Part shown: positions 3,310-47,385 of the stretch, piece by piece
Layout of the letters: each line of letters opens with the position of its first letter
Position numbering within the stretch: position 1 is the stretch's first letter
NCBI GenBank assembly: GCA_004431415.1
Contig: QPMI01000477.1
Coordinates: 62,001-126,000 of the forward strand
Direction of reading: 5' to 3'
Length of the DNA stretch: 64,000 nt
Origin: Cyanophora paradoxa CCMP329
Taxonomy: Eukaryota > Plantae > Glaucophyta
Program-made: the position numbers and the translations under genes
Notes under the pieces: model-generated
What the model was told of the DNA's origin: nothing
The model's input: only the letters and a program-made list of their open reading frames with translations
The model's database searches: none

Positions 3310-3717
3310 TATTATTATGGGGAGGACCCCCCCCAAATCAAACCGCCGACAAGTCTGATTTTACCTTCAGGGATCCACCCCATTTTAGCGTCATCAACTA
3401 ACATTTTCCCTGAAAAATTTTAGACGTGTTACAAGTAGATGTGTTGATGGGAAAAGCATGGATATGGAGATTGGAGGGCGTGAGAGCGAGTACAGAGAAG
3501 CTAAACGAGGAAAATGCGTTAAGCTATAGCTAGGCGATATTAATGAGTACAGAGAAGCTAAACGAGGAAACGTGTTAAGCTCTAGCTAGATGTAATTGAT
3601 GTGTACAGAGAAGCTAAACGAGGAAAAAGCGTTAAGCTATAGCCGCACGTAAGGACGGGAGCGTCAGCCAGAAGGCTTCCTGCTCTTCGAGCCCCCAGAG
3701 CGGTCTGGTGCGGCCTC
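3310..3717 (+). repeat. Left terminal inverted repeat (408 bp)
   Basis: TATTATTATGGGGAGG...GGTGCGGCCTC is the reverse complement of 22760-23167, with no mismatch seen by eye. Contains three ~56-bp GTACAGAGAAGCTAAACGAGGAAA..TTAAGCT.TAGC units. Confidence 0.97.
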
Positions 3718-22443: not shown

Positions 22444-22761
22444 ATGGATCTGCTCCGTAAATGCATGGACATGTTCCATCTCAACGTCACCAGCAAATTG
22501 AAATGCAGTTGCTGCGAGACAACTATTAACCTCGAAATATCTGACACTGAGGGGTCCCGCACCCCTGATACTCAGCTATCGCCTAATAACACACCCGGGA
22601 CTTCTAGGTCCAATTCTCCTTTTACGCGATCTGACTCACCTGTACCTTGGCTTGATGCTGAAGGTCGAAGATTATCTTGGCCACCCCCAAAGCCGCTGAA
22701 AAGAAGGAAGTCCTTGCTATCAAGTTTCCGAAAGGAGAAGCAACCCGATCAAGTGGAATGA
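22444..22761 (+). CDS. Small hypothetical protein (KCSCC motif, Ser/Pro-rich, basic tail)
   Basis: AATAATAGATG start; the stop codon overlaps the inner edge of the right TIR. Confidence 0.6.
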   Translation: MDLLRKCMDMFHLNVTSKLKCSCCETTINLEISDTEGSRTPDTQLSPNNTPGTSRSNSPFTRSDSPVPWLDAEGRRLSWPPPKPLKRRKSLLSSFRKEKQPDQVE

Positions 22762-23167
22762 GGCCGCACCAGACCGCTCTGGGGGCTCGAAGAGCAGGAA
22801 GCCTTCTGGCTGACGCTCCCGTCCTTACGTGCGGCTATAGCTTAACGCTTTTTCCTCGTTTAGCTTCTCTGTACACATCAATTACATCTAGCTAGAGCTT
22901 AACACGTTTCCTCGTTTAGCTTCTCTGTACTCATTAATATCGCCTAGCTATAGCTTAACGCATTTTCCTCGTTTAGCTTCTCTGTACTCGCTCTCACGCC
23001 CTCCAATCTCCATATCCATGCTTTTCCCATCAACACATCTACTTGTAACACGTCTAAAATTTTTCAGGGAAAATGTTAGTTGATGACGCTAAAATGGGGT
23101 GGATCCCTGAAGGTAAAATCAGACTTGTCGGCGGTTTGATTTGGGGGGGGTCCTCCCCATAATAATA
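22760..23167 (-). repeat. Right terminal inverted repeat (408 bp)
   Basis: Reverse complement of 3310-3717, followed by the TSD GACGCT. Confidence 0.97.
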
Positions 23168-27553: not shown

Positions 27554-29526
27554 TACACTATAAATTAAAATGCGGCACTAAATTAATGCGTTTTGAAATT
27601 TTTTGGTGAATTACCGGCCACAGTCTCTAGACACCAGCACTGCGGGGGCTGCCCAGGGGGCATAGAGACAAAAAAGCAAAATAACTAAGACAAGAGCACG
27701 AAGAAAGATAAGACAAAGAGCCAAAATCGACAATAAAAAAGGAAAGACACAGAGCTCGAGACAGATCGATTGCGAGAAGAGACGATAAATCGAGCAGATC
27801 TAGGGACAGAGGATAACTGACACGAAGAAGAGCCAGAGCTAGAGGATAACTGACACGAAGAAGAGCCAGAGCTAGAGATACCATCAATATCAGAAGGAAT
27901 TACATCACTAAGAAGCGGGGGACAAAATTGAGAAAGATAAAGAACAGGAAGAAGACAAGTAAGAGGAACAACAAGACGACATGGAGGCGGAGGCGAAGCA
28001 GGACGATGCGAAAGGGCAGAGCTACGGCACGAGGTCGAGGAGGACACAGGAGGCGGAGCAGGCGGATCAAGAGCAGGCAAAAGAACAGTCAAAGGAATCA
28101 CTAAAGCCGGCCGGGGTCGAGGCGGGCAATCGAACTGCAAACGACGGCGAACAACAGGTCGAGCACGAGGACTATAGCTAGTATTGAAACTAACTCTAGC
28201 ATCAACACTACGATCAGAATCCGAACCAGACCGAACTAAACTAGAAGACGAAGAAGTACGCCGGCGCCGGCGGGATACGATCGCGACCAGCGAAGCAGAA
28301 GACAAGGACAAAGGCGGTAGTCCGGTATCAAGAACAAAGGCCGGAGGGTCCGGCCCGGCAAACCGCCGGGGGGAAGTAGAAGGAAGCCTTTTTGCTGCAA
28401 ATGTGGGGTATACGTACAGACCGCAGTTTCTTAGCGCTTCAATATTATAAATTTATAATGCGGCCCCAAATTAATGCGGCCCCATATAATGCGAACTTTG
28501 CGAAGTTCGGAAGTTCTTCCCCCCGCGTATATTTATGAAATATATACAGCCACTGATCGAACCGGCCACGCTCTGTACCCGGGTTCTGCAGCACTGCGGC
28601 AAAGCGCTCAGCGGCTCAGCGGGCCCGGGCGCTAGCGCTCATCGGCGGAGTCATCATGGCATCGATCGGCCCGGCGGGCGCGGCCGTCCGACGGTCGCGG
28701 CGACGCGGCGGCGTCGCCTCGAGCTCGAGCTCAGCACTGAGCTCAGCAGCCTCAGCTGCAGCGAGCCGCCTGCGGGCCGCGGCCTGCCTCTCTTCGGTAC
28801 GCCGTAGTACGGTACTACTAGTATTCCGAAGTTCGGTAGCGGTACCGGTGGGCGGATCGAGCCCTCGGAGGGCGGACCGTCCGACGCAATAGTAGTCGGT
28901 CGGGCGCGCTCTGATATCGATGGACGTCGATAGAGATCATGGTCACCGGGTGCCGCAGTGCGATGGCGCAGGGGCACGAGCCTGATCATGGCCACTGGGC
29001 CATGAGCCAGATCTGGCCGCGGACCCCGGCCCGCCGCCAGCGTCTTTGAGCTGCATGCGCAGCTGCAGCGGCGACCTCAGCGCGCTGCCCCTGCAGCTGC
29101 CATGTCGCTTCAACCGCTGTCATGGCCAGACAGCAGCAGCCACGTGCACGTGCGCGCCGTCTCAACGCTATTGCAAGATCTAGATGCAGATGTGCGCACG
29201 GTACCGGTTGAATCCCGCATCCGCGCATGCTCTCGCGGATCGCAAGTGTCTGGCGACTACCCTGTTAAGCGTTGCACTTGCAATCGCAGGCGCCAGCGTC
29301 CCGCACAAAGCGGCCGTCAGATGTGGCCATGGCGCCATCGATCTCAGAGCCACATGGCCATCACGTGCACGGGCGCCGGAGCGGCAGCGAGGCGCGCGAG
29401 ACCCATCGCGAGGCATGGCGCTCGCAATTGCACGTGGAGCGTCGGCTGGATCGCGAAGGGCACCGCAGCCCGTCGCGGTTGGCGCCAACGCTGCAGCTGG
29501 CCATCGACGGCGCGGGGCTGCAGGCG

Positions 29527-32191
29527 ATGCACTTTCAGCTGCCCCCCGCGGACGAGGAGCAGCGCTCCGTCTGGCGGTTCATGCGGAGCGCGCTCGAGTC
29601 GAGGCCCGCACCGCGCTCGGCGGGCTCGAGCGCTGCAGCCGCCGCCGGGGACAGGAGCCGCGGGGGCTTCTGGGCGAACGCGCGCGCGCTCGGCCTCATC
29701 CTCGGGGGCCCGTCCCTCTTCGGCGCCCTCCAGTTCGGCCTCCCCTACCATTCGATCCCGCACCACGTCGGCCGAGCCTTCCTGCTCGGCCTGCTGACTT
29801 CCCTGGGGGCCGGCGCGAACGGTGACTTGCACGCGCGCTGACTACAGATCGGCTTTGACTTGAAATTCCGCCCGGCAGGCGCCTTCTGGTTCTCGACGTT
29901 TACGCGGGCCCCGCTCCGGAGAATCTCCCTCGCTTACGCGGCCCTCTTCGTCGCTCTCTCCTCCGCTCTCTTCGCGGCTCTCGACGCCGCCGTAGACTGT
30001 GCGTCCGCAGATTCATCCGACGTCTCTTGGGCGCCCTCGCGGTGACGCGGCCCCCGCATGCGCAGTGGCTCGAATCCCGTTCGCCACTCTGGGGCTGCTA
30101 CTTATCTTCCTCGTCTCCAACCAAATCTGCTCCCGCCTGCTCGCTCGCTTGTATTTTCGGCGGGTTGGTTCCATCTTCTACGGCGGCGGCGCGGCCTCCA
30201 GCTCGAATCCGGACGTGGCTCTGCCGTCCAGCTTTAGATCGGCGCCTGGATCCAGCCACCCCTCCCGCGCCTTCGTCGTCGTGGGGCGATTCCAGGTACC
30301 GATGTTCGCGCGCCCCGGCCGCTGCAGCTCGCCTCTGATGTTCGTTGCAGTCGTTGAGCAGTCTTTTGCTCGCGGTATGCGAGACACTCCCCCCCCCCCG
30401 CCCCCCCCCCCCCTCTTCTCCCCGCCCCCGCCCCCCCCCCCCCCCTCTTCTCCCGCCCCCGCCCCCCCCCCCCCCCTCGCGGTATGCGCCCTCCCCCCCC
30501 CCCTCCTCCCCCCCTCTCCCCAGAACCCCGCCTTGCGCTCCTTCGGCCACCTGATGCCCCGCCTGCAGATTCTAGGGGGTTACCTGTTCCTTTTCTCGTA
30601 CATACGGTCGACAGTCGTCCAGGTCGGCAAAGCTTTGGATTCGCGAAGGCTGTTAGCACTGAGCCGCGGCCGGTCGATTTCCGCAGGTTTTCCTGAACAT
30701 CGCCGTGACTTCCGTCTGCTTCTTCATCGTGCTGCTCCAGCTCAAGCTGTTCGGCGGCTCGCTCCTGGCAAGCATGCCACACGGCGACGCCGCCGTAATC
30801 CACGTCCTCAACATGATGTGAGCCTTGCTTGAGCCCCTCAGACTCGCACCTCCGTCAGATCTAGATTCTCTCGTGGCGGGCCCCCTGCAGCTAGCTATGA
30901 CGCTGACGGAAAGGCGGGCAGGATCAACGTGCGCGTGCTGCGCCAGCTCGCCTTCTTCCAAGTGAAGTCGGTCACCGTCTACCTCGTCTCCATCGCCACC
31001 GACCTCCTCTCCCTCCTCCTCCCCCTGCTCCTCCTCCTCCGCCGCTTCGCCCGGCCCTTCGCCCGCCGCGCCGTCCCTTGGCTCCGTGCCCGGTCGGCGG
31101 TCCCCGCCGACGCGAGGCAAGGAGAGGGGGCGAGCACGCCGGCCCCCACGTCTACGGACGCTGCGACGATTCGGAGTCCGAGCCGCGTCAATCCGACGCC
31201 GGCATCTGATGGCGCCGAACGTCCTTCGTTGTCAGAGCACCCCGCGGAGCGGGCGAGCGGCAGCAAGGGCATCGATATCGCCGCCTCGTCATCTCTGTCG
31301 ACGCGAAGCGCCCACGTAGCCGCCCCGGCCGCGGGCGACGCGGTGTCGATCGCGAGCCGAAGCCCGACTTTCGACCGGGGGTCCGGAACCGTGGCCGGGG
31401 CTGCAGATCCGGATGCGAGCCTCTGGGTGTACAACGTGCAGCACGGCATCCGGTTCGCCCCCCGGCTCGCTCGCTGGGACTCTAGATCTCGATCTGCAGC
31501 TGCCGCTGAAGCGCGCGCAGGACGATGCTGCTGTGGAACGCGGTGGTGGCGTGGGCCGCCTGCGCCATCTTCGCCACCGCCGTCGCCGTCGCCCGCTTCG
31601 GCCCGGGCGCCGCCTCCTTCCCCTACTCCCCCGCCACCTTCTCCCGCGCCGACTTCGAGAACGCCCTCATCTTCTCGGCGGTCACCGCGTGCGCCGCGTT
31701 TTCTGTAGCTTCAGATCGATGCCGATGTCGGTCCGCTCGAGATCTGACTCACGGCGTCGGTCGACCTGCAGCGGGTTCAACGCCGCCGTCGTTGCCGCCA
31801 TGCACGCCGCGGCTGCCTTCTTCCCGAACCTGCGGGACCACCTCGGCCTCGCCCCCTCCTGGCGCTTCCTCCGGTGCGCGGCAGCCCTCCTGTCACCGCG
31901 TCTCCTTGCTCTCGATGTCGTGTCCTTTGATCCGGACTCTTGGGTTCGCAGCGAGCACGCCTTCACGCTGGCCTTCATGTTCTGGCCATCCACCGGCTCC
32001 GCTTTAATTGCGTTCAACCGCCAGGTCCGAACACCCCCCGCCCCCCCCTTCCCCCCCTGTTCTCACCCCCCCCCTCCCTCTACCCCTCCTCCCCCCCGTC
32101 CCCTATTTGCTTTGCTGATTCGACTCCGCGCACCCTGCAGACCAACATTTACTACTTCGTCTTCCCCGAAAATTACGTTCCCCTGTCTTAA
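29527..32191 (+). CDS. Multi-exon, multi-pass membrane protein, tandem copy 1; start uncertain
   Basis: Hydrophobic exons (ALGLILGGPSLFGALQFGLP, ISLAYAALFVALSSALF, LLWNAVVAWAACAIFA) separated by short GT..CAG introns. Ends NIYYFVFPENYVPLS*. Confidence 0.65.
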
Positions 32192-32395
32192 GCTTGATGG
32201 GCTTGTACCCTCCGGGCGCCCCAGCAGGGCCCAGCTGCAGGCTCTCGGCGCGTCCGCCCTTCTCATGGCCTCCTCCAAGTCCGCCCGCGGACCCGACGCC
32301 TTCGAGCCGGGCCCCAGAACGCCACAAGGTGTGCGCATGGTTTTTCTGCTCAAGGCCTAAATCTCCGCCGGAATGACGTTTTCGTCAGATCCCAA

Positions 32396-32833
32396 TGTTG
32401 AGCTAGAAATCCCCCATTCCGGTGCCCTAGGGGTGGCACGGGATTCTAGACAACAGGTTTATAGAGTGACTCTGACCTGCAGTGAGTGCAAGACCGGCCC
32501 CAGCGTGATGCAGGTTCAGCAGTATGACAGTACTCGTAGATTTGATCCGACAGAGTTTCACTACTCTAGTCTCTCTACTAGGCCGATCTCCGGGAATGAC
32601 AAAATCCCCTAAACACGCACGCGCCGGGCTCTTGAAGCCCTCACGCTGTCGTCCGAAGCTCTCATGATCAGATCATATGATCCGGTCAGACGGCTCAGAC
32701 ATATGAAAAGCAAGCCGCTGGATTTGAACCCGAGTCTCTAAGTACGCCGAAGCGAACTGCCGGAATTGAACCCGGGTCTCTACGAACGGCAAATTCTCTA
32801 ACGCTGCAGCCGCCTAAGATTTCGCCCGCGACA
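32396..32833 (-). repeat. 3' LTR (438 bp)
   Basis: Direct repeat of 36970-37407; no differences seen by eye. Confidence 0.95.
32706..32815 (-). promoter_or_regulatory. tRNA-like Pol III A/B-box segment inside the LTR (second copy at 37280-37389)
   Basis: The minus strand reads GGCTGCAGCGTTAG (A-box-like), GGGTTCAATTCC and GGGTTCAAATCC (two B boxes), then TTTT. Confidence 0.6.
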
Positions 32834-34821
32834 TTCGTCGCAGCAGAGAAAAGCCGTCCTCGGCGCCTGCTACCCCACCCGCGACGTTCGTCGCAGCAAA
32901 ATGCGAGGCCTAGCATATGTAAACGTAAATCAGGTCCTGAAACCTCAGTACCACGAAGAGGTCAGGCCAGAAAATACGGATACGAAATCCGACACTGAAG
33001 GCTGCAAAAGCAAAGCCCTCTGAGAACCTCGGAAATATAATTAATGCCTGCGTGCGAAATTCAGAAGACGTGCTAAATGAAAAGTGGCCGAGGCGTTCTA
33101 ACGCCCTGACGGCCCTAGCAGCACGAAGGCTGCACTAAATCTAGCAGCTCGAAGGCTGCAATACCTAAATCAGAGAAAATCAGAAACTGGCAGAGTATAA
33201 CTAAAGCTTCACATCTAGAGCTCAGAAAATATTTCTGAAGCTCAGGTACAAGCTAAACTCAACGATATGAATCGTGATCACGATCGATATTCTAAAATCA
33301 GAATATCGAGATATCGATCGCAAATCGAACAGCTCAAGCTGCGTACTGCTACTTGGCTGCGAGCTCGAGCTTGAGTCGCTGCAGATGCTGCCTACTCGCC
33401 GCGCGCTGCGGCTGATATGTACACGATTTGTACAAATGCTTCGAGCTCCAGCTGCGGCTGCCATGAAGAACGCCGACAGCTGCATACATACGCGTTGCAA
33501 ATGCGAGAAACGCAAATATGTATAATGAGAGGTCGATGCAAGGTGCGGCCATGCTTGAACCAGCATCGCCAGCACGACTCTCTCGACGAGGGGCAGTCTT
33601 GATTTGGGAATGACAGCGCCCTCGTGGACTTGCCGTGGACGTTGGCCTTGCAGACGCCGCAGCTCCTTCAACGTCGGCGAAGTCTGGCCCCTCCGGCCTG
33701 CGTCTGAATCTGTAGACGGCGAGAAAACGAGGGAGCCCTGTACATCCAAACGCGGGCGCCGCCGCGATGAGTACTTCCAAATTTCCACTCGTGATCTCTG
33801 AACCGCCTGACAAGATCCTCCGCCGTTCGACCCGAGAATTAAATTGCGGCCGGACGCACAGCTAAGGTGACGGTTGCTGTGTGCCCGCCGGCGGTAGGTG
33901 CGATTGCACGTCGAGTCCGAAGACCCAGAAGGTCCGCCGGGGATGCTCTATCCTCCGCCGGGTCAGGAGCACGACCAGAGCCGGTGCCGTCCGTAGCCAA
34001 CAGGAGATTGTGGCGTCCCACTCCCCCCCGAAGGCCAGGCGACTTCCACACCCTTCCGTCGTCCCCTCCTTGATTCCAAGCACGACAAAGGCCGGTTCCA
34101 TCCGACCATGGGAGGTGCGCTTGCCTTGTCGTCCTCTTTCTTGTTGAAGTCAAGCCCGCTCCTCACGAGACGGACTGCATCTCGACGACGCCGCGTCGAG
34201 ACACGCTTGACTTGAGTGTAGTAACCCCACGGCGACGATAACGCTGAGCTCGCGTCCGTCTGATGCAGGGCCGATTCCGGTCTCGTCGGATGGGTGTCAA
34301 CCGGTCCAGTGCTGTCCTGAGCGCCCTCCTGTCACGAGCAGGTCCGCGCCTCGAGCGAGACTTCGGGCATCCCACCCTCCACGGTTGTCCTCCCGCTCAC
34401 GACTGTCCACAGCGCCCTCCTGGGTTCTTCCCATCCTGGCCAGGGCATGGGCAGGTCCGCGCCTCGGTCGTGAACGCCGGTTCACCGGATCGGAGCGACG
34501 CCTTCTCCAAATTGTACAAATTCACGAATTCGAAGTCCGACCAGACCAAGCTCCTGGTCATGATCATAATCAAGTCACGGTCAATCCAGACCTTCAATGT
34601 CAGAAGAAAGGCCGTCGCTGTCGCAGGTGCGCGCAGTCCAGCACCGCGAAGCTGCCACCGCTCCACCCTCAACTTGAGAAGTGCAGCTGAAAATCACAAG
34701 TATACGCCACCACGTCGCAGAGACCACACCCCTCTTCGCGACGATATAAATCCTCATTGCTCCTCCGCTGGTCTTTTAATTCGCTTCACAGGCGGAGACC
34801 GAACCGCCATGGCGTATACTT

Positions 34822-35997
34822 TCACTTCGCGCCCGCCAGACTGCCGGAGCTCCGATATTTCTCGAGCTCCTGCTGACAGGCTGAATATTGCACTTGCAGC
34901 TGGTTCAACTCCCGTTGAAGTCGCTTGCTACAGACGGTAGTGTTGTGCGAGCCGCTCTTGCATTCATCGCACCAACGAGGCTGTCCGCCGCCCTGACTTG
35001 AAATTAACTTCAGCTTCTTGCTGTCGGGCTCTTCGATCGCGACGTCGTCCTCCTCGAGGCGATGACGATCAGGGAAGGCGGAAAGTTGAGCAACAGGAGC
35101 TCTTGCCGCTGCAGTAGAAAATTGATTGTCGGTCCTTGCTTGCTGCAATCGACTCTCGAGCGCGTTGCGCGACCGAACTCGACTGAAGAATTCGCGACTC
35201 CACTCCGCCAGATTATTTCTGGAGCCCTCCGGAATTTTACTCATAAGCTTGATCATTGACGGTGAAGTGATCGAATCCGACGACATTATTTCCGCGATCA
35301 ACATCTCGTCGGAGAACGAATCCTGAAGCTGCAGTAGACGACGAAGAATAACAACATTATTTATAAAAGCTTGCGCATCCAGCTCAGATGGATTTGCCAG
35401 CGCAGAGAAGCGACGTCCCGCCGTCTTGATAGTGTTCTTCAGAAGCTCGAATTTGTTGCCAGGCACCAAGCCGAGCAGGTGCTCACGAATTTGTGCCCAC
35501 GACGTCATGTCCAAGTCGCCATTGCCCGACTTCGTAGTCATGACACCCAGCACAGCCGTCGAGAAGGATCCATGCAACGGGTCACTTGTCGAGCGCTGCA
35601 GCGAAGACAGTGCAAGCTCTGCCAACGTCTTGTCGGGTTCTGTGTATGTCGGAGGCCGGATACAAATTGTTAAACGTTCCAGCGACTCGACCCACGACAG
35701 TACACCCGTATTAGTCAAAGGAGGAATTTTCTCCTTGAATTCTCGCAGTTCGTGGTGACGTGTTTGCATGTCCAGGTTGCCAGTTAACGCGTCCAGTGCG
35801 TTCTTCAACGTGTTCTCGACTGCAGCAGCTGCTACCGCTGCCGGGGCCGCAACAGGCGCCGGAGCTGGTACCGGTGGTGCAACTGGAGCCGGAGGCGGAG
35901 CTGGCGCAGGCGCAGGAGCAGGCACTTGCGCTCCATGGCCAGCCGCCCCGTGACCGCCGCGTTGGCCTCCGCCCCTGCCCCGTGTACTCGGAGCCAT
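34822..35997 (-). CDS. gag: Gag-like protein with a CCHC zinc knuckle
   Basis: 391-aa intronless ORF between the LTRs. CDECKSGSHNTTVC fits CX2CX4HX4C, preceded by a helical capsid-like region (SWVESLE..SWAQIREHL). Confidence 0.85.
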   Translation of the reverse strand: MAPSTRGRGGGQRGGHGAAGHGAQVPAPAPAPAPPPAPVAPPVPAPAPVAAPAAVAAAAVENTLKNALDALTGNLDMQTRHHELREFKEKIPPLTNTGVLSWVESLERLTICIRPPTYTEPDKTLAELALSSLQRSTSDPLHGSFSTAVLGVMTTKSGNGDLDMTSWAQIREHLLGLVPGNKFELLKNTIKTAGRRFSALANPSELDAQAFINNVVILRRLLQLQDSFSDEMLIAEIMSSDSITSPSMIKLMSKIPEGSRNNLAEWSREFFSRVRSRNALESRLQQARTDNQFSTAAARAPVAQLSAFPDRHRLEEDDVAIEEPDSKKLKLISSQGGGQPRWCDECKSGSHNTTVCSKRLQRELNQLQVQYSACQQELEKYRSSGSLAGAK

Positions 35998-36969
35998 GGA
36001 GAACTTGAGCTAGACACGTCCGCCCGCCGCTCGATACCGAGCGCCGCGCGCAGTACTAGTGCAGGCCCGCGCGCCCCTTGGGCTCGAGTTCGAATTCAGA
36101 CGTCGACTCGTGTGCACGCCCAGTCGCAGACGAGGCTTGAGAGTTGCGAGTTCACTTGCGACAGCACTAGCTCCACTAGTACAGAAGCTTAAGTGCGCTC
36201 GGCCTCGCAGCGAAGCCGAGAGCCGCTCACGGTCGACCGCGCCGCGCGCAGCCTCCCCGCCGGTGCGCCGCCGCGCGCGCGCCCGCCGATGCGCCGCGCG
36301 CCCGCGACCGGCGCGCACGCGCTCGCAGGCTCGAGCTCCCCGCCGCAGGTCCGCCGGCGCGCAGCCGGGATGCCGGCGCGCGCCCCGGTTCCGGATCCGG
36401 CGCTCCGGATCCGGCCGGCGCCCGCGGCGCTCCGCGGATCCGGATCTCGCGCGAGGTGCAGCGCCGCGCCGCGCCGACGAGCCGCCGATCTACAGCCCGG
36501 TCTGCAGTGCAGACGCTGCGACGAGCGAGCGGCGATCAGCCCTGCGACGCGTGCGTGGCGCCTAGATCTAGAGCCTCGGAGCTAGCCCGGCTAGCCGCGA
36601 CGTCGACGTCGTCGCTAGCTATAGTGGCGGCCGGCGGCCGGCATGCGCGCGCACGCGCCGCGCGCGCTAGCGACACCGGGTCCGGAGCCCAGCGCTAGCC
36701 CCAGTCGCGACCCAGGACGGATTGCAAAGGGATGTATACGCATCTTTAAGCAACGCGTAGGCGCGATGGCGCTGGCGGCAGCGTCCGCTCACCCGCGATA
36801 GGTTGCGCCGAGCGGGAAGGGGTTGAACGAATGCGCGAAACGGTTCTGGTCAGCGCACAGCGACTTCTGAAGGCACAGCGACTATGCGCATGAAATGAAC
36901 GCGAGGCGAAGCTCGCTCGGCCAGCTCGCATGCGCAGAGCCAGCGTTCGCGTTTGAGCAGCCCCCAAGA

Positions 36970-37407
36970 TGTTGAGCTAGAAATCCCCCATTCCGGTGCC
37001 CTAGGGGTGGCACGGGATTCTAGACAACAGGTTTATAGAGTGACTCTGACCTGCAGTGAGTGCAAGACCGGCCCCAGCGTGATGCAGGTTCAGCAGTATG
37101 ACAGTACTCGTAGATTTGATCCGACAGAGTTTCACTACTCTAGTCTCTCTACTAGGCCGATCTCCGGGAATGACAAAATCCCCTAAACACGCACGCGCCG
37201 GGCTCTTGAAGCCCTCACGCTGTCGTCCGAAGCTCTCATGATCAGATCATATGATCCGGTCAGACGGCTCAGACATATGAAAAGCAAGCCGCTGGATTTG
37301 AACCCGAGTCTCTAAGTACGCCGAAGCGAACTGCCGGAATTGAACCCGGGTCTCTACGAACGGCAAATTCTCTAACGCTGCAGCCGCCTAAGATTTCGCC
37401 CGCGACA
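36970..37407 (-). repeat. 5' LTR (438 bp)
   Basis: Direct repeat of 32396-32833. Confidence 0.95.
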
Positions 37408-37415
37408 CCAACTCA

Positions 37416-37471
37416 TTTTTTTTTTGAGAGACTACGGTGGGGCGAACCCCCCGTAGGTAGTGATATTAACA
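37416..37471 (-). mobile_element. Short hairpin+poly(A) retroposon, copy B
   Basis: T10-GAGAGACTACGGTGGGGCGAACCCCCCGTAGG flanked by the direct repeat CCAACTCA (37408-37415, 37472-37479). Confidence 0.75.
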
Positions 37472-39541
37472 CCAACTCAGAGTCTGATGTTCAACGGTTA
37501 TCATAGTATATTATAATCAGAGCTATATATATATAGCGATAGGTCGGCCTTGCAATTGGGGAAAGGAGAGGCCCTTAGGTCTGTTGGTCACTTGTCACAA
37601 AATTTTAGAAAGCGAAATTCGTATTTTTGAAGACACCTACTACCCCATTTTAGACCCTGGGGAGCACGATGGTCCGGCCCGTTTTCCTATGAGAGGCCTC
37701 TAATGGGCAGTAACAGCACGTCGAAAAGCATCGAAAAGCATTTTCACGAAAAGCGCAAATAACATTGGTCGTCCGAGTCGAAATTTGAAAATTATTAATT
37801 TCAAGAGACCGCACCCCATTCGCTAGGAAATAGTTTCCAAATTAACGGAGCGCCACGGGGCCGGCCAGCAAATTTGTATGAGTCAGGGTCGTTGTGTGCC
37901 ACCAGGTGGGTTTTAAATATACTTGATGCGTTAGTTGAAAGATTATCAAAATAAACAATTTAGACAGAGCCTTATTACTGCGAATTACATTCAAATGATT
38001 CATAGATTATCATTAACCACCTCCAAAAAGCGCCGAAAGTCGTTTTCATTCAGCTGAGACGACCAATGGGCCCCTCGGGGCCTGTACTCGGTACAATGGC
38101 GGCCGATTGGGCCCCGCATCGATATCTGTACCCTTGCGACACAATTTTGTACCCTCTTACTTGAGTGTGTACCCTTGCCGAGTGGACCCCCCTATTTCTC
38201 CTCCCCCCTCCCCCGTAACCGCGCGCGGTTGCGGGCCCCGTTTTAAAACAAAGAGCGGCCACCCTCACGCCTTGAGACCCCAAGACCCAAGGCCACTCCT
38301 GCTCCGCAGGGACTCGCTTGTAAAAAACATACTATAGCTATAATTATAAGTAATCGGTTGTCGCGGCCACTCGCGCTGGCATATGCATGCAGCCCCGGCC
38401 CACTTGCAGCGGCCCACTTGCTCCATCGGCCGCGGGGCTGCAGCTGCAGCAGCTGCTGCAGCTTCACCCGCGGGCTCCTGCGCTCGCGCACGCGCGCAGC
38501 ATGCTCAGGGTTCGTGAACGCTGGACAGCGCGATGCGCGCGAACCTGGAAATGTGGCTGCTGAGCAGGGAAAGCGCTTCCGGGCTCAGGCTCGATCGAGC
38601 TAACGCAGCTGCGCATCATATCATGGGCCTTCATCAGGCTTCATGGCGCATATTGCAATTGATCATGACCGATTCATGTCATCGATTCATGACCCCAATT
38701 CCTGTACATGCCTACGTATACCAAGTACCCCCCGACCACTCATTGCAGCAATTTGCAGGCTTTATTTTGCAGCTTGCGCATGCAATTGCAAGTTAAGGTG
38801 ACTCAGTGAAAGCTTAAGGCACGCAGTGCCACGCACCGAGGCACGGCCGCGGAGTCGGCGCGGAGCGGCGTGGCGCACCGCGCCGCCGCCTCAGAAATCG
38901 ATACCAGTAGTCTCCTGAGTCCTGAGCTGCACGGAGCCTGCACGGCCGCTTAACGCAGGCAGCGCAGGCTGCTGGGTCGATGCGATGGTTCAGAGGCACG
39001 AGCCTGATCATGGCCATGAGCCAGATCTGGCCGCGGACCACGCCGCCAGCGTCTTTGAGCTGCATGCGCAGCTGCAGCGGCGACCTCAGCGCGCTGCCCC
39101 TGCAGCTGCCATGTTGCTTCAACCGCTGCCATGGCCAGACAGCAGCAGCCACGTGCATTTGCGCGCCGTCCCAACGCTATTGCAAGATGCACATGTACAT
39201 GTGCGCACGGTTGAATCCCGCATGCGCGCATGCTCTCGCGGATCGCGAATGTCTGGCGACCACCCTGCTAAGCGTTGCGCTTGCAATCGCAGGCGCCGGC
39301 GTCCCGCTCAAAGCGGCCGTCGGATGTGGCCATGGCGCCATCGGTATCAGCTGCAGAGCCCCATGGCCATCACGTTCACGGGCGCCGGAGCGGCAGCGAG
39401 GCGCGCGAGATCCATCGCGATCGAGAGGCATGGCGCTCGCAATTGCAAGTGGAGCGTCGGCTGGATCGCGAAGGGCATCGCAGCCCGTCGCGGTCGGCGC
39501 CAACGCGTACGCTGGCCACGGACGGCGCGGAGCTGCAGGCG

Positions 39542-42398
39542 ATGATGCACTTTCAGCTGCCCCCCGCTCACGAGCCGGAGCAGCGCTCCGTTCGGCGGTT
39601 CATGCAGAGCGCGCTCGAGTCGAGGCCCGCACCGCGCTCGGCGAGCGTTGCCGCCGGGGACAGGGGCGAGGGCCGCGGGGGCTTCTGTGCGAACGCGCGC
39701 GCGCTCGCTCTCATCCTCGGGGGCCCGTCCCTCTTCGGCGCCCTCCAGCTCGGCCTCCCCTACCATTCGATCCCGCACCACGTCGCCCGAGCCTTCCTCC
39801 TCGCCCTCCTCGCTTCCCTGGGGGCCGGCGCGAACGGTGCATTTCACTCGAAACGGGCTCCAGCCCTCTAGATCTAGATCTGCCGAGGTCGCACTCGCGG
39901 CAGCTAAATATACCTTAGTAGAGGTTGAGCCCGTCCGGCAGGCGCCTTCTGGTTCTCGACGTTTACGCGGGCCCCGCTCCGGAGAATCTCCCTCGCGTAC
40001 GCGGCCCTCTTCGTCGCCGTCTCCTCCGCTCTCTTCGCGGCTCTCGACGCCGCCGTAGACTGTGCGTCCGCAGACTCATCCGACGTCTCTTGGGCGCCCT
40101 CGCGGTGACGCGGCCCCCGCATGCGCAGTGGCTCGAATCCCGTTCGCCACTCTGGGGCTGCTACTCATCTTCCTCGTCTCCAACCAAATCTGCTCCCGCC
40201 TGCTCGCTCGCTTGTATTTTCGGCGCGTCGGCTCCACCTTCTACGGCGGCGGCGCGGCCTCCAGCTCGAATCCGGACGCGGCGCTGCCGTCCAGCTTCAG
40301 ATCGGCGCCTGTATCCAGCCATCCCGCCCGCGCCTTCGTCGTCGCCGGGCGATTCCAGGTACCGATGTTTGCGCGCCCCGGCCGCTGCAGCTCACCGCTG
40401 ATGTCCGCTGCAGTCGCTGACCACTCTTTTGCTCGCGGTATGCGGTCCCTCTTCCCCCCCCTCCTCCTCCCCCCCCCCCCCTTCCCCTCCCCCCCTCCTC
40501 CCCGCCCGCCTTTCCTTCCCCCTTCCCCCCCCCCCCAACACCCCCCCCGTCCTCCGCCCCCCGCCGCCCTCCCCCACCCGAAATCTCCCTTGCGCTCCTT
40601 AAGTCACCTGATCCCCCGCCTGCAGATTCTCGCGGGGTACATATACCTTTTCTCGTACACACGATCGGCAATCGTGCAGGTCGGCAGCGCTTCGAATTCG
40701 CGAAGCTTTAAGACTGCCAGCGCTGAGCCGCGGCCGGCCGCTTCTCGCAGGTTTTCCTGAACATGGCCATGACGTCCCTTTGCTTCTTCCTGGTCCTGCT
40801 CCAGCTGAAGCTGTTCGGCGGCTGGCTCCTGGCAAGCATGCCCCACGGCGACGCCGCCGTGATCCACGTCCTCAACATGATGTGAGCCTTGCTTTGCTCC
40901 CCGAGCCCCTCGGCCCCCCTGCCCCGGCCCCGAGGTTTCCCCGCCGGTCCCGCCCCGCCCTTCTGAGGGGGCGCCCGGCAGGACGGTGGTGCGCGTGCTG
41001 CGCCAGCTCGTCTCCTTCCAAGTGAAGTCGGTCACCGTCTACCTCGTCTCCATCGCCACCGACGTGCTCGCCCTCCTCCTCGCCCTCCTCCTCCTCCGCC
41101 GAAGCTTTGCGCGGCACTTCGCCCGCCGCGCCATCGCCTGGCTCCGCGACCGATCGACATCGGCGGCCCCCGCCGAGCAGCTGCACGCGAGGCGAAGGGG
41201 GGCGGCGGGTGCGCCGGCCGACGTCCCCTCGTCTACGGACGCCGCGTCGATATCGATCCGGGGTCCGAGCCGCGACAGCGCCAGCGCCAACCCGACGCCA
41301 GCATCCGATCGCGCCGAACGCCCTTCGGTGTCCGAGCACCCCGCGGAGCGGGCCGGCGGCAGCAGCAAGGGCATCGCCGCCTCGTCATCTCTATCGACGC
41401 GAAGCGCCCACGCAGCCGCCCCGGCCGCGGGCGACGCGGTGTCGATCGCGAGCCGAAGCCCGACTTTCGACTGGGGATCGGGACCCGTGGCCGGGGCTGC
41501 GGATCCGGATGCGAGCCTCTGGGTGTACAACGTGCAGCACGGCATCCGGTGCAACCCCGGCCCGTCTCGGACCGGCTCGCTCGCTCGGGCCCTCGGTGTG
41601 CCGCTGAACCGCGCGCAGGACGATGCTGCTGTGGAACGCGGTCGTCGCGTGGGCCGCCTGCGCCATCTCCTCCACGGCCGTCGTCGTCGCCCGCTTCGGC
41701 CCCGGCGCCCCCTGCTTCCCCTACTCCCCGGCGACCTTCCCCGACGCCGACTTTGCGAACGCCCTCTTCTTTTCGGCGGTCACCGCGTGCGCCTCATTCC
41801 CTGTACATATACAGCTTCAGATCGATGCCGATGTCGATTCGCTCGAGATCTGACTCCACGGCGTCGGCCCGCAGCGGATTCAACGCTGCCATCATTGCCG
41901 CCCTGCACGCCGTCTCTGCCCTCTTCCCGAACCTTCGAGAGCAGCTCGGCCTCGCCCCCTCCTGGCGCTTCCTCCGGTTCGCGGCGTCCCTCCTGCACTC
42001 GCACCTCCCGGCCCTCGGTGCCGCCTCCTTTGATCCGGACTCGTGAATTTGCAGGGAGAACGCCTCGACGCTGGCCTTCATGTTCTGGCCGTCCACCGGT
42101 GCCGCTTTAATTGGGTTCAACCGCCAGGTCCGAACACTCCGCGCCCCCCCCCCCCCCCCCCTCCCCCAACAACAACAACACAACAACAACAACAACCACC
42201 CCTCGCGCCGCGTCCCTATCGCCGTCCCCCCCACCCCCACCCTCCGCTCCGGAGTCCCCCCACCCACACCCCCCACCCCCCGCCCCCTCGCGTCCCGTAT
42301 TTGCTTTTTGCTGATTCGACTCCGCGCACCCCTACCCCTCCCTGCAGTCCAACATATACTACTTCCTCTTCCCCCAGAATTACGTTCCCCTGTCTTGA
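39542..42398 (+). CDS. Multi-exon membrane protein, tandem copy 2 (most divergent); start uncertain
   Basis: Exon-by-exon paralog of copy 1. Ends SNIYYFLFPQNYVPLS*. Confidence 0.65.
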
Positions 42399-42537: not shown

Positions 42538-44018
42538 TAGCGATATTATTATCAAAGCTAGCGAGAATTATGAAACGTATTTTAATTATAATTATAAGTA
42601 ATCGGTTGTCACAGTGTCGCGGCCGCTCGCGCTGGCATGCAGCCCCACCCCACCGGGGGCGCGTAGCCGGCTTGCAGCCCGCGGTGCCTCTTCGAATTCT
42701 GCGTTCGGATCCCCTATCGATATCCGGAGACGCCCCCTCCCCCCGAAATTAGACGCTTAGCTATAGATTTCACCTTTCGTCTCGATCTCTGCGCGTTTAA
42801 TTTCGTAACATCTTTGAGCTCTTGGCGCCTAGCGCCACTGCACCATCAGGTTCCTCGGGGCCTGTCCGTCCCAGTTGGGCGGGCCCGGGGCGGCCGCATT
42901 GATCATGAGCGATATACACCGTCGGGGCGGAGCCCTCACCCCTCCTCATGGCCCGGATTCATAGGTCTTCATGGCATTTGATCATGATTGATATTGCAAT
43001 TGACCGATTCATGTGATCGATTCATGACCCCCTATTCCTGTATCATGCCATCATTCAATGATCATTGCCATGATGCCACTACGCATACCAGCCTATTACC
43101 AGGTACCCCCCGGCCAGAGAGTCCGACGTCGACGGTCATTAATTTCAGCTTGCAACTTAAGTTGAAAGCGTAAGGCGCCGCTTAGGCGCGCACGGGGCGG
43201 CGCTGCGCCGGCGCACCGCGGCACCCGGGCCGTGGCACCGCCGCGGAGTCGGCGCGGAGCGGCACCCGGATCCGGGAGTCGGCGCGGAGCGGCACGCCGC
43301 GCGCGCCGCCGCCTCAGCCTGGCAGAAATCGATATCAGCAGTCTCCTGATCATGAGCTGCACCGCTTAACGCAGGCAGCGCAGGCTGCTGCGCGCTCGGT
43401 ACGTCCGACGCACTAGGGCATCGGATCATGGTCATGATCATCGGATGCGATGGTTCAGAGGCACGAGCCTGATCATGGCCATGAGCCAGATCTGGCCACG
43501 GACCACGCCGCCAGCGTCTTTGAGCTGCATGCGCAGCTGCAGCGGCGACCTCAGCGCGCTGCCCCTGCGCATGCAGCTGCCATGTTGCTTCAACCGCTGC
43601 CATGGCCAGACAGCAGCAGACATGTGCACGTGCGCGCCGTCCCAACGCTATTGCAAGATCTAGATGCAGATGTGCGCACGGTACCGGTTGAATCCCGCAT
43701 CCGCGCATGCTCTCGCGGATCGCGAATGTCTGGCGACTATCCTGTTAAGCGTTGCGCTTGCAATCGCAGGCGCCGGCGTCCCGCTCAAAGCTGCCGTCGG
43801 ATGTGGCCATATGCATGGCGCCATCGGTGTCAGCTGCAGAGCCCCGTGGCCATCACGTGCACGGGCGCCGGAGCGGCAGCGAGGCGCGCGAGATCCATCG
43901 CGAGGCATGGCGCTCGCAATTGCACGTGGAGCGTCGGCTGGATCGCGAAGGGCATCGCAGCCCGTCGCGGTCGGCGCCAGCGCGTACGCTGGCCACGGAC
44001 GGCGCGGAGCTGCAGGCG

Positions 44019-46716
44019 ATGATGCACTTTCAGCTGCCCCCCGCCCACGAGCCGGAGCAGCGCTCCGTCTGGCGGTTCATGCGGAGCGCGCTCGAGTCGA
44101 GGCCCGCACCGCGCTCGGCGGGCTCGAGCGCTGCAGCCGCCGCCGGGGACAGGAGCCGCGGGGGCTTCTGGGCGAACGCGCGCGCGCTCGGCCTCATCCT
44201 CGGGGGCCCGTCCCTCTTCGGCGCCCTCCAGTTCGGCCTCCCCTACCATTCGATCCCGCACCACGTCGCCCGAGCCTTCCTGCTCGGCCTGCTGACTTCC
44301 CTGGGGGCCGGCGCGAACGGTGACTTGCACGCGCGCTGACTACAGATCGGCTTTGACTTGAAATTCCGCCCGGCAGGCGCCTTCTGGTTCTCGACGTTTA
44401 CGCGGGCCCCGCTCCGGAGAATCTCCCTCGCTTACGCGGCCCTCTTCGTCGCTCTCTCCTCCGCTCTCTTCGCGGCCCTCGACGCCGCCGTAGACTGTGC
44501 GTCCGCAGATTCATCCGACGTCTCTTGGGCGCCCTCGCGGTGACGCGGCCCCCGCATGCGCAGTGGCTCGAATCCCGTTCGCCACTCTGGGGCTGCTACT
44601 TATCTTCCTCGTCTCCAACCAAATCTGCTCCCGCCTGCTCGCTCGCTTGTATTTTCGGCGGGTTGGTTCCATCTTCTACGGCGGCGGCGCGGCCTCCAGC
44701 TCGAATCCGGACGTGGCTCTGCCGTCCAGCTTTAGATCGGCGCCTGGTTCCAGCCACCCCTCCCGCGCCTTCGTCGTCGTGGGGCGATTCCAGGTACCGA
44801 TGTTCGCGCGCCCCGGCCGCTGCAGCTCGCCTCTGATGTTCGTTGCAGTCGTTGAGCAGTCTTTTGCTCGCGGTATGCGAGACACTCCCCCCCCCGCCCC
44901 CCCCCCCCCCCCTCTTCTCCCGCCCCCGCTCCCCTTCCCCCCCCCCCCCCGCCCCCTCCCCGCCTCCCACCCCCCCACCCCCCTCCTCCTCCTCGCCCGC
45001 CTCCCCTTCCCGCCCCCCCCCCCCCCCCCCCCTCCCCCAGAACCCCGCCTTGCGCTCCTTCGGCCACCTGATGCCCCGCCTGCAGATTCTAGGGGGGTAC
45101 CTGTTCCTTTTCTCGTACATACGGTCGACAGTCGTACAGGTGGGCAAAGCTTTGGATTCGCGAAGGCTGATAGCGCGCGCTGAGCCGCGGCCGGCCGATT
45201 TCCGCAGGTTTTCCTGAACATCGCCGTGACTTCCGTCTGCTTCTTCATCGTCCTGCTCCAGCTCAAGCTGTTCGGCGGCTCGCTCCTGGCAAGCATGCCC
45301 CACGGCGACGCCGCCGTGATCCACGTCCTCAACATGATGTGAGCCTTGCTTGAGCCCCTCAGACTCGCACCTCCGTCAGATCTAGATTCTCTCGTGGCGG
45401 GCCCCCTGCAGCTAGCTATGACGCTGACGGAAAGGCGGGCAGGATCAACGTGCGCGTGCTGCGCCAGCTCGCCTTCTTCCAAGTGAAGTCGGTCACCGTC
45501 TACCTCGTCTCCATCGCCACCGACCTCCTCTCCCTCCTCCTCCCCCTCCTCCTCCTCCTCCGCCGCTTCGCCCGGCCCTTCGCCCGCCGCGCCGTCCCCT
45601 GGCTCCGTGCCCGGTCGGCGGCCCCCGCCGACGCGAGGCAAGGAGAGGGGGCGAGCACGCCGGCCCCCACGTCTACGGACGCTGCGACGATTCGGAGTCC
45701 GAGCCGCGCCAATCCGACGCCGGAATCAGATCGCGCCGAACGTCCTTCGTTATCGGAGCACCCCGCGGAGCGGGCCAGCGGCGGCAAGGGCATCGCCGCC
45801 TCGTCATCTGTGCAGCTGTCGACGCGTAGCGCCCACGTAGCCGCACTGGGCGCCGCGGTGTCGATCGCGAGCCCGAGCCCCGTTCTCGACTCCGGATACG
45901 GACCCGGGGCCGGGGCCGGAGCCGGGGATCCGGATGCGAGCCTCTGGGTGTACAATGTCCAGCACGGCATCCGGTTCTCCCCTTATTGCTCGCTCGCTCG
46001 GGCCCTCGGTGTGCCGCTGAAGCGCGCGCAGGACGATGCTGCTGTGGAACGCGGTCGTCGCGTGGGCCGCCTGCGCCATCTTCGCCACGGCCGTCGCCGT
46101 CGCCCGCTTCGGCCCGGGCGCCGCCTCCTTCCCCTACTCCCCGGCCACCTTCTCCCGCGCCGACTTCGAGAACGCCCTCATCTTCTCCGCGGTCACCGCG
46201 TGCGCCGCGTTCCCCCCTATAGCTTATCGATGTCGATGCCGATGTCGATGTCGGTCCGCTCGAGATCTGACTCACGGCGTCGGTCGACCTGCAGCGGGTT
46301 CAACGCCGCCGTCGTTGCCGCCATGCACGCCGCGGCTGCCTTCTTCCCGAACCTGCGGGACCACCTCGGCCTCGCCCCCTCCTGGCGCTTCCTCCGGTGC
46401 GCGGCAGCCCTCCTGTCACCGCGTCTCCTTGCTCTCGATGTCGTGTCCTTTGATCCGGACTCTTGGGTTCGCAGCGAGCACGCCTTCACGCTGGCCTTCA
46501 TGTTCTGGCCATCCACCGGCTCCGCTTTAATTGCGTTCAACCGCCAGGTCCGAACAACCCCCGCCCCCCCCCTTCCCCCCCCCTGTTCTCACCCCCCCCC
46601 TCCCTCCCCCCTCCACCCCCCCGTCCCCTATTTGCTTTGCTGATTCGACTCCGCGCACCCTGCAGACCAACATTTACTACTTCGTCTTCCCCGAAAATTA
46701 CGTTCCCCTGTCTTAA
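44019..46716 (+). CDS. Multi-exon membrane protein, tandem copy 3; start uncertain
   Basis: Near-identical to copy 1 over most exons and introns. Ends TNIYYFVFPENYVPLS*. Confidence 0.65.
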
Positions 46717-47385
46717 GCTTGATGGGCTTGTACCCTCCGGGCGCCCCAGCTGCAGGCTCTCGGCGCGTCCGCCCTTCTCATGGCCTGCTCCAAGTCCGCC
46801 CGCGGACCCGACGCCTTCGAGCCGGGCCCCAGAACGCCACAAGGTGTGCGCATGGTTTTTATGCTCAAGACCTAAATCTCCGCCGGAATGACGTTTTTGT
46901 CAGATCACAACTATCCCAACTCTCAGAGTCTGATGTTCAACGCTTATCATATTATATTATAATCAGAGCTAGCGATAGTCAAGAAACATACTATAGCTAT
47001 AATTATAAGTAATCGGATGCCACGGCCACTCGCGCTGGCGTGCACCCCCACCTGCAGCTACGCACAACGGGGGGCCTAGGCCTGGCGCGGGCGTGCAGCC
47101 CGCGGCGCTTCAATTATTCTGCGCTCGAGGACACCCCCTTCCCCCCCCCCCCCTCTCTCCCCCTCTCCCCCGCAAATCATTCTATTCCCCATATGCATCC
47201 TCTGCGAATTTCAAAAGAGCTAGTCCGGAATTCATTCAAGAAAAAAAGCAAACAAAAATCGATACAAGCGCAAAAAGCTCGTCGGCGCGAGCAATATAAA
47301 AATACGTCCATACATAAAGAATTCGAAAGTGCGATAATACTACGAGGCGGCCCGCTGGCTCCGGACGGCCGCGCGGGTGCTATAA

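What the first reader, a model, noticed from the sequence alone, without database searches (positions are those of the whole stretch)
32706..32815. LTRs carry a tRNA-derived Pol III promoter: a possible tRNA analogue of Cassandra elements
Seen: on the element's sense (minus) strand, ~20-130 nt into each LTR, the sequence reads GGCGGCTGCAGCGTTAGAGAATTTGCCGTTCGTAGAGACCCGGGTTCAATTCCGGC, then GAGACTCGGGTTCAAATCCAGC, then TTTT. This is an A-box-like motif, two B boxes and a terminator-like run, resembling tRNA-Gly with the anticodon arm collapsed. Known: Cassandra TRIMs carry 5S rRNA Pol III boxes in their LTRs, and B boxes bind TFIIIC and can act as insulators. Inference: a gag-only LTR family using a tRNA-type promoter or insulator, or producing a small RNA. 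I do not know of a described example.
Basis: partly seen in the sequence, partly recalled or inferred. Interest (0 to 1): 0.8.

Follow-up and report, generated by a model that had tools for sequence, protein, structure and literature searches.

The report
Decayed tRNA-like piece inside retrotransposon LTRs
Both repeats of a young gag-only retrotransposon, probably in the alga Cyanophora paradoxa, carry a duplicated tRNA-type B-box motif ending in TTTT, but there is no A box and no detectable tRNA, and LTRs with tRNA-like inserts were already described in 2024 as Helenus.

Summary
The quoted sequence is exact and lies at nt 20-128 of two identical 438-bp LTRs of a 5,012-bp gag-only LTR element (32396-37407, minus sense, 4-bp TSD TTGG).

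What holds:
- Two perfect GGTTCRANNCC B-box/T-loop motifs lie 42 nt apart.
- They come from one tandem duplication of a 33-nt "T-arm + 7-nt acceptor strand + T-run" block (27/33 identical).
- A TTTT run sits exactly where a tRNA gene would end.

What fails:
- The A box is no better than chance (5 of 8 positions; 99.7% of shuffles do as well).
- ARAGORN at default settings and Rfam find no tRNA. A relaxed ARAGORN cloverleaf scores at p≈0.03.
- The fold is no more stable than shuffled sequence.

The 5-kb RNA cannot be a Pol III product: the sense strand has 16 T4 runs, and a TATAAA lies at LTR nt 371.

My best reading is a decayed tRNA-gene or SINE-head remnant in U3 of a Pol II-driven element. 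Pol III or TFIIIC use is unproven.

The idea is not new. Kojima 2024 (PMC10886601) named tRNA-bearing TRIMs Helenus.

This scan has also noted tRNA-like LTR cassettes on other DNA of this genome: s1-512769 (a follow-up agent called it Helenus), s1-509706 and s1-509873. I could not fetch those sequences or any sister LTRs.

The parts
32396..37407 (-). Whole LTR element, 5,012 bp, non-autonomous, with gag as the only recognisable gene
   Evidence: The terminal repeats are identical. The ends read TG..CA and the 4-bp TSD TTGG lies at 37408-37411 and 32392-32395. A paralogous locus at about 46900-46925 lacks the insertion.
36970..37407 (-). 5' LTR, 438 bp
   Evidence: 100% identical to the 3' LTR; sequence read.
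32396..32833 (-). 3' LTR, 438 bp
32751..32825 (-). Unit 1: weak cloverleaf-like stretch, LTR nt 9-83 (same at 37325-37399). The acceptor-like helix is GCGAAAT/AGTTCGC with 6 of 7 pairs.
   Evidence: Found only with ARAGORN -ps80, score 87.8. 3% of shuffled LTRs score as high. Fold z-score -0.14.
32762..32772 (-). B-box / T-loop motif 1, GGTTCAATTCC (same at 37336-37346)
   Evidence: Rfam aligns only this 11-mer to a T-loop.
32708..32740 (-). Unit 2: tandem copy of the 3' half of unit 1, LTR nt 94-126 copying nt 52-84 (same at 37282-37314)
   Evidence: 27/33 identity, score 36 against a maximum of 20 in 1000 shuffles.
32720..32730 (-). B-box / T-loop motif 2, GGTTCAAATCC (same at 37294-37304). 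A sister copy reads GGTTCGAATCC.
   Evidence: The variant 37299 T>C on the + strand is seen in DNA contigs of runs X5 and X6.
32706..32709 (-). TTTT run directly after the 7-nt acceptor-like strand GGCTTGC of unit 2 (same at 37280-37283)
   Evidence: It is one of two T4 runs in the LTR.
32458..32463 (-). TATAAA at LTR nt 371-376, the likely Pol II core promoter (same at 37032-37037). It places the tRNA-like block in distal U3.
   Evidence: The role is inferred.
34822..35997 (-). gag-like ORF, 391 aa, with a CX2CX4HX4C zinc knuckle
   Evidence: No Pfam family. No relatives in the word-based protein search. Atlas feature hits point to Retrotrans_gag, zf-CCHC and Ty3_capsid clusters at about 0.92.
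36955..36966 (-). Candidate primer-binding site TGGGGGCTGCTC, 3 nt after the 5' LTR
   Evidence: The primer tRNA is not identified. The region has no complementarity to the LTR's tRNA-like block above chance.

Best explanation
The block at LTR nt 9-128 is most likely a decayed remnant of a tRNA gene or a tRNA-derived SINE head that became part of U3 of this LTR family. Its 3' half (variable region, T arm with B box, 7-nt acceptor strand, T-run) was later duplicated in tandem.

The element itself is a Pol II-driven, gag-only, non-autonomous LTR retrotransposon. Transcription probably starts about 30 nt after the TATAAA at LTR nt 371 (inferred). The tRNA-like block is therefore copied only as part of the 3' U3 of the genomic RNA and regenerated in both LTRs at each round.

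It is not the promoter of the genomic RNA. In this copy it lacks an A box, so it is not a complete type-2 Pol III promoter. Any present role, such as TFIIIC binding or U3 enhancer activity, is secondary and unproven.

Shown: the anatomy, the duplication, the B boxes, the T4 position, the absence of an A box or tRNA, and the multi-copy family. Inferred: the tRNA origin, Pol II use, and the lack of Pol III function.
For: - Both motifs are exact GGTTCRANNCC matches, followed by 3 nt, a 7-nt strand and then T-runs (TT after unit 1, TTTT after unit 2). This is the layout of a tRNA gene's 3' end.
- Only two T4 runs exist in the 438-nt LTR, and one sits exactly there.
- A 6/7 acceptor-like helix encloses a 75-nt stretch of tRNA size. 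The ARAGORN relaxed score of 87.8 is reached by 3% of shuffled LTRs.
- A sister copy carries the canonical GGTTCGAATCC, so the purine at T-loop position 57 is kept.
- Precedent: tRNA-derived sequence in LTRs is documented as Helenus, and partial tRNA matches occur in 'not a few' Repbase LTRs. A follow-up note reports a Helenus-type TRIM with a decayed tRNA-Tyr in this same genome. I did not check that note.
- Pol II reading: TATAAA at nt 371, 16 T4 runs on the 5-kb sense strand, and a gag ORF that needs an mRNA.
- Contigs from runs guessed to be RNA span the whole LTR and the internal/LTR junction, as expected for long transcripts rather than a discrete small RNA (records 8 and 9). This is weak evidence.
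Against: - Rfam's tRNA model finds nothing beyond an 11-nt T-loop, and ARAGORN at default settings finds nothing.
- The A box is at chance level.
- The fold energy equals that of shuffles.
- T-stems pair at only 3 of 5 positions in the standard register, read directly from the sequence.
- B-box matches occur by chance about once per 64 kb, and three unrelated ones lie in this window. The two boxes count as one event.
- I could not compare the block with this genome's own tRNAs or with sister LTRs, so the tRNA origin is not proven.
- Identical LTRs give no information on selection.
Confidence: 0.5

Rival explanations
1. Chance resemblance. The 42-nt spaced repeat is an ordinary U3 enhancer duplication for Pol II factors whose core happens to match the B-box consensus, with no tRNA ancestry.
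For: - No tRNA by ARAGORN at default settings or Rfam.
- A box at chance level.
- No excess fold stability.
- GGTTCRANNCC is expected 1.13 times per window, and three unrelated matches are present.
- The relaxed ARAGORN score is only p≈0.03.
- Tandem repeats in U3 are common in LTRs (established knowledge).
Against: - The T4 run lies exactly 3+7 nt after the B box, as at a tRNA gene's end.
- A 6/7 acceptor-like helix sits at tRNA spacing.
- The same genome reportedly has Helenus-type TRIMs (not checked by me).
Confidence: 0.25
2. Functional Pol III unit. TFIIIC binds the B boxes, and Pol III makes a roughly 115-120-nt RNA from each LTR, ending at the TTTT. The RNA would be a by-product or a regulator of the family, as proposed for Helenus/TRIMp3.
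For: - Two consensus B boxes and a T4 run in the correct order on the sense strand.
- The B-box purine is kept in a sister copy.
- Cassandra and Helenus are precedents.
Against: - No A box.
- No upstream element can be constant, because the block starts 8 nt inside the LTR.
- No discrete RNA is visible, although contigs cannot show one.
- It cannot serve the element's own 5-kb RNA.
Confidence: 0.12
3. TFIIIC-only site, like yeast ETC sites or SINE B-box insulators. The paired B boxes at the outer edge of each LTR bind TFIIIC without Pol III and act as a chromatin boundary around the element.
For: - B boxes without an A box are what ETC sites look like (established knowledge).
- The boxes are paired and lie near the outer LTR edge in both LTRs.
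Against: - There is no direct evidence.
- Nothing is known about TFIIIC sites in glaucophytes.
- Variation within the block among copies gives no sign of constraint, though only a few variants were shown.
Confidence: 0.1

Closest known systems
Helenus (TRIMp3), Kojima 2024, Biology 13:119, PMC10886601
   Same: - LTR retroelement with tRNA-like sequence inside both LTRs on the sense strand.
- GGTTC of box B conserved.
[quoted passage not shown]
- Non-autonomous.
- 4-bp TSD, as in animal Helenus.
   Different: - Helenus elements are 311-1263 bp TRIMs without ORFs and are thought to be transcribed by Pol III. This element is 5,012 bp with a 391-aa gag ORF and a TATAAA in the LTR.
- Helenus keeps the box A signatures TRGCY and YGG, which are absent here.
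- Helenus is not reported from glaucophytes or any alga (Table 1).
Cassandra TRIMs (5S rRNA-derived Pol III promoter in the LTRs; Kalendar et al. 2008, as summarised in PMC10886601)
   Same: A small-RNA-gene-like block sits inside both LTRs and is followed by a T-run.
   Different: - Cassandra carries a 5S-type promoter (box A, IE, box C), not a tRNA type.
- It is 565-860 bp with no ORF.
- Pol III transcripts have been shown for it. None of that is shown here.
tRNA-derived SINE heads (SINE2) inserted in LTRs
   Same: A decayed tRNA-like head with a B box. Kojima proposes a SINE2 insertion into an LTR as the origin of Helenus.
   Different: - No SINE body or tail is recognisable.
- No free-standing copy exists in this window.
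- No TSD surrounds the block inside the LTR.
ETC (extra-TFIIIC) sites and SINE B-box insulators
   Same: B box without a usable A box; paired sites.
   Different: This comparison is functional only. No binding data exist for this organism.

Membership tests
Helenus / TRIMp3 | TRIM architecture: total length about 0.3-1.3 kb, two LTRs, no protein-coding region | tested here: not met
   The element is 5,012 bp with a 391-aa gag-like ORF.
Helenus / TRIMp3 | tRNA-like sequence in the LTR with a conserved box B (GGTTC) | tested here: met
   GGTTCAATTCC and GGTTCAAATCC on the sense strand of both LTRs.
Helenus / TRIMp3 | Box A signatures (TRGCY ... YGG) upstream of box B | tested here: not met
   There is no TRGCY in LTR nt 1-61. 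The best A-box match is 5 of 8 positions, reached by 99.7% of shuffles.
Helenus / TRIMp3 | PBS, PPT and a 4-5 bp TSD (integrase-mediated insertion) | tested here: inconclusive
   The 4-bp TSD TTGG and TG..CA ends are met. A TGG-starting candidate PBS is present, but its primer tRNA is not identified. No clear polypurine tract lies next to the 3' LTR.
Helenus / TRIMp3 | Transcription of the element by RNA polymerase III | not testable with these tools
   Only contigs were available, and they cannot show starts, ends or a small RNA. Sequence argues against it for the 5-kb RNA: 16 T4 runs on the sense strand.
Cassandra | 5S rRNA-derived sequence in the LTRs | tested here: not met
   No Rfam 5S hit, or any other hit, in the window or the LTR.
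tRNA gene or pseudogene | Cloverleaf recognised by tRNA finders or a covariance model | tested here: not met
   ARAGORN at default settings finds 0. Rfam at gathering threshold and at E<=10 finds no tRNA. Only ARAGORN at an 80% threshold gives a hit, score 87.8, p≈0.03.
tRNA-derived SINE (SINE2) | Free-standing copies outside LTRs with their own TSD and a LINE-type tail | tested here: inconclusive
   No copy exists outside the two LTRs in this 64-kb window. There are no related loci in metagenome or viral collections. The rest of the genome could not be searched.

The most novel reading that the evidence does not exclude
The same B-box-bearing LTR would be shared by this 5-kb gag-coding element and by the ~1-kb TRIMs that the scan noted elsewhere in this genome. 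Those TRIMs are 1053 and 1099 bp, which would fit two 438-bp LTRs plus about 180-220 bp. One LTR would then serve two polymerases: Pol II for the gag-bearing form and Pol III (or TFIIIC) for the miniature form or a small LTR RNA. That would be the first Helenus-type system in an alga and the first with a protein-coding partner sharing its LTR. Kojima 2024 considered that kind of sharing unlikely.
Probability: 0.1. Interest if true: 0.65.

Novelty: new variant of a known kind. Interest (0 to 1): 0.3.

Why it matters
If the block is tRNA-derived, the habit of LTR elements capturing small-RNA-gene sequence (Cassandra, Helenus, Ajax) would extend to glaucophytes and to a protein-coding, Pol II-type element. 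It would also offer a decayed intermediate for asking whether such captures start as promoters or as passengers.

There is a practical side. Such blocks can inflate tRNA or SINE predictions in genome annotation.

As it stands, this is a modest annotation point. The idea is already published, the A box is missing, and function is untested.

Tried and rejected
- **Self-encoded primer.** I looked for complementarity between the 70 nt after the 5' LTR and the LTR's tRNA-like block. The best local score was 15, reached by 251 of 1000 shuffles. Rejected.
- **Stable structured RNA.** Fold z-scores were -0.14 (75 nt), +0.14 (120 nt) and +2.1 (unit 2). Rejected.
- **CpG decay as the cause of GGTTCA in place of GGTTCG.** CpG observed/expected is about 1.0 in the LTR and 1.14 in the window. 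Not supported.
- **Fetching sister copies.**
  - The gag protein found no relatives in the word-based protein search.
  - No exact gag gene is on record.
  - A degenerate 23-nt pattern found three unrelated AT-rich metagenome contigs and no viral contigs.
  - The search of earlier findings by sequence was blank.
- **Tandem Repeats Finder and the bacterial promoter/terminator scan** found nothing in the LTR.
- **pol remnants.** Seven other ORFs of the element have no Pfam family.
- **tRNA-gene targeting of the insertion.** There is no tRNA gene in the window.
- **Possible tRNA-Tyr origin.** From memory, the T-loop plus 3' T-stem (GGTTCRATTCCGGC) resembles eukaryotic tRNA-Tyr, the isotype another agent named for a TRIM in this genome. 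I could not test this and do not rely on it.

Full report
**Observation**

On the minus strand the quoted strings occur exactly at 32814..32706 and again at 37388..37280.

A self-comparison of the window shows two 100% identical direct repeats, 32395-32833 and 36969-37407. Read on the minus strand, they start with TG and end with CA, giving 438 bp each (32396-32833 and 36970-37407). They are flanked by a 4-bp target-site duplication TTGG.

A 93%-identical paralogous locus in the same window (43446-46910) runs straight through the equivalent site without the element. It therefore serves as an empty-site comparison.

The only convincing ORF is 34822-35997 on the minus strand:
- It is 391 aa with a CX2CX4HX4C knuckle.
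- It has no Pfam family and no relative in the word-based protein search.
- Its language-model features sit next to Retrotrans_gag, zf-CCHC and Ty3_capsid clusters at about 0.92.

Seven other ORFs have no family. The description 'young, gag-only LTR element, sense strand minus' therefore holds. Earlier notes of this scan place the genome in the glaucophyte Cyanophora paradoxa. I did not test that.

**What the tRNA-like block is**

In LTR coordinates the features are:
- GGTTCAATTCC at nt 62-72.
- GGTTCAAATCC at nt 104-114.
- TTTT at nt 125-128.
- TATAAA at nt 371.

Both 11-mers fit GGTTCRANNCC exactly, which is the B box or T-loop with a purine at position 57. That pattern is expected 1.13 times per 64 kb, and three unrelated matches occur elsewhere in the window. 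With the stricter GGTTCGANTCC and one mismatch, 13 matches are found against about 5 expected. A B box alone is therefore weak evidence.

The two boxes are also one event, not two. LTR nt 52-84 and nt 94-126 are a tandem duplication, with 27/33 identity and score 36 against a maximum of 20 in 1000 shuffles.

Each copy reads: AGAGA, a T-arm-like hairpin, 3 nt, a 7-nt strand, then T's (TT after the first, TTTT after the second). That is the order of parts at the 3' end of a tRNA gene with its terminator. Only two T4 runs exist in the LTR, and one falls exactly there.

**Tests of tRNA identity**

- ARAGORN at default settings finds no tRNA in the window.
- Rfam finds nothing at gathering threshold. 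It finds no tRNA at E<=10 on 551 nt or on 96 nt. Only the 11-nt T-loop aligns, at 3.2 bits, to the tmRNA model, which is in the tRNA clan.
- With ARAGORN's threshold lowered to 80%, a 75-nt cloverleaf appears at LTR nt 9-83. It has an acceptor helix GCGAAAT/AGTTCGC with 6 of 7 pairs, a 5-bp T stem with a 6-nt loop, a poor D arm and anticodon TGC.
- Its score of 87.8 is reached by 12 of 401 shuffled LTRs, about 3%. The same setting also gives an obviously spurious antisense hit in the LTR.
- The fold is no more stable than shuffles, with z = -0.14 for 75 nt and +0.14 for 120 nt.
- The claimed A box fails. 99.7% of shuffles do as well.
- The TRGCY signature that Kojima reports for Helenus is absent from nt 1-61.

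**Family and expression**

Contigs from four public runs of one organism were laid on the element.

A contig matching the paralogous empty site gives a rough single-copy depth of about 107 in run X5. Against that:
- LTR bins sum to about 1800-2700.
- Internal bins sum to about 500-1300.

The family is therefore multi-copy, very roughly 5-10 elements plus extra LTRs. Contig depths are crude.

Among the few variants shown, two lie in the block:
- 32776 G>A on the + strand makes GAGATCCGGG in unit 1.
- 37299 T>C on the + strand makes the second box the canonical GGTTCGAATCC.

The box stays within consensus but is not invariant. One contig lacks LTR nt 114-226. Most variants were not listed, so conservation could not be measured.

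In two runs guessed to be RNA:
- One contig covers the whole LTR and runs on (record 8).
- One contig bridges the internal region into the LTR (record 9).
- Diverged gag copies are present.

This fits long read-through or genomic transcripts, or DNA carry-over. It says nothing about a small RNA.

I found no way to fetch sister LTRs. The protein look-ups, one metagenome scan and one viral-contig scan gave nothing related.

**How it most likely works**

The 5-kb sense strand has 16 T4 runs, the first at LTR nt 125 and nt 230. It must also be translated into Gag. The LTR has a TATAAA 67 nt before its end.

The genomic RNA is therefore almost certainly a Pol II transcript. The block lies in distal U3 and is carried only in the 3' U3 of that RNA. 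It cannot be a Cassandra-style promoter of the element.

I read it as a decayed remnant of a tRNA gene or SINE head whose 3' half was duplicated, with confidence about 0.5. The rivals are:
- A chance or enhancer repeat with no tRNA ancestry (0.25).
- A functional small Pol III unit (0.12).
- A TFIIIC-only, ETC-like boundary (0.1).

A self-encoded primer is rejected, because there is no complementarity to the PBS region above chance.

**Comparison with what is known**

Kojima (2024, PMC10886601) described Helenus, which are TRIMs of 311-1263 bp with tRNA-derived sequence in their LTRs. They occur in rust and agaric fungi, six animal phyla and Selaginella. Together with Cassandra and Ajax they form the TRIMp3 group.

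That paper also notes three relevant points:
- Many Repbase LTRs contain part of a tRNA.
- Helenus rarely encodes a plausible tRNA.
- Pol III use by Helenus is still unproven.

The present element shares the tRNA-like B-box block in both LTRs, non-autonomy and a 4-bp TSD. It fails two defining features: it is not a TRIM, and it has no box A. I therefore do not file it as Helenus. It is a related variant, a protein-coding Pol II-type LTR element carrying a Helenus-like remnant, in a lineage not listed for Helenus.

**What the scan already holds**

Three other first-reader notes describe TRIMs with tRNA-type cassettes in LTRs elsewhere in this genome: s1-512769, s1-509706 and s1-509873. A follow-up agent filed s1-512769 as a Helenus-type TRIM with a decayed tRNA-Tyr that keeps both boxes.

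I could not read those sequences, so whether they share this LTR is open. Their lengths of 1053 and 1099 bp would fit two 438-bp LTRs plus a short core. That is the basis of the novel case, to which I give 10%.

**Verdict**

- Interest is 0.3.

Noticed in passing
window 37416-37476 (minus strand), directly upstream of the 5' LTR: A ~50-nt hairpin plus A11 mini-retroposon is flanked by an 8-bp duplication TGAGTTGG. The LTR element's own TSD (TTGG) is the last 4 nt of the second copy, so two different retroelements inserted at the same spot. Contig depth there is about 59,000 in X5 against about 107 for single copy, so this mini-element is very abundant. It matches scan note s1-515661.
   Followed up: partly
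window 28959-32395, 38979-42162 and 43446-46910: Three paralogous ~3.4-kb segments are 83-93% identical to one another. The LTR element sits at the end of the first, and the third provides the uninterrupted site, although with 11 extra nt (CTATCCCAACT) at the junction.
   Followed up: partly
window 32821-32899 (minus strand): A 21-nt motif TGCTGCGACGAAYGTCGCGGG occurs twice, 59 nt apart. It contains the palindrome GCGACG..CGTCGC. The second copy straddles the start of the 3' LTR. DNA contigs show a copy with this region duplicated again (joint 32868>32825 with 19 nt between). No clear polypurine tract abuts the LTR.
   Followed up: no
window 34212-34352: Inside the element, downstream of gag, contigs from the runs guessed to be RNA reach their highest depth (276 in X16) with about 10% divergence. 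A related sequence elsewhere seems much more expressed than the element itself.
   Followed up: no
window 3310-3717 and 22760-23167: Perfect 408-bp inverted terminal repeats bracket a ~19.9-kb segment. Other notes of the scan call it a Polinton-like virus.
   Followed up: no
window 32387: Contigs from both runs guessed to be RNA follow the LTR for 8 nt past its end (to 32387) and then diverge into 289 and 624 nt of other sequence. Neither the local flank nor this copy's internal region explains that (records 1 and 8).
   Followed up: no
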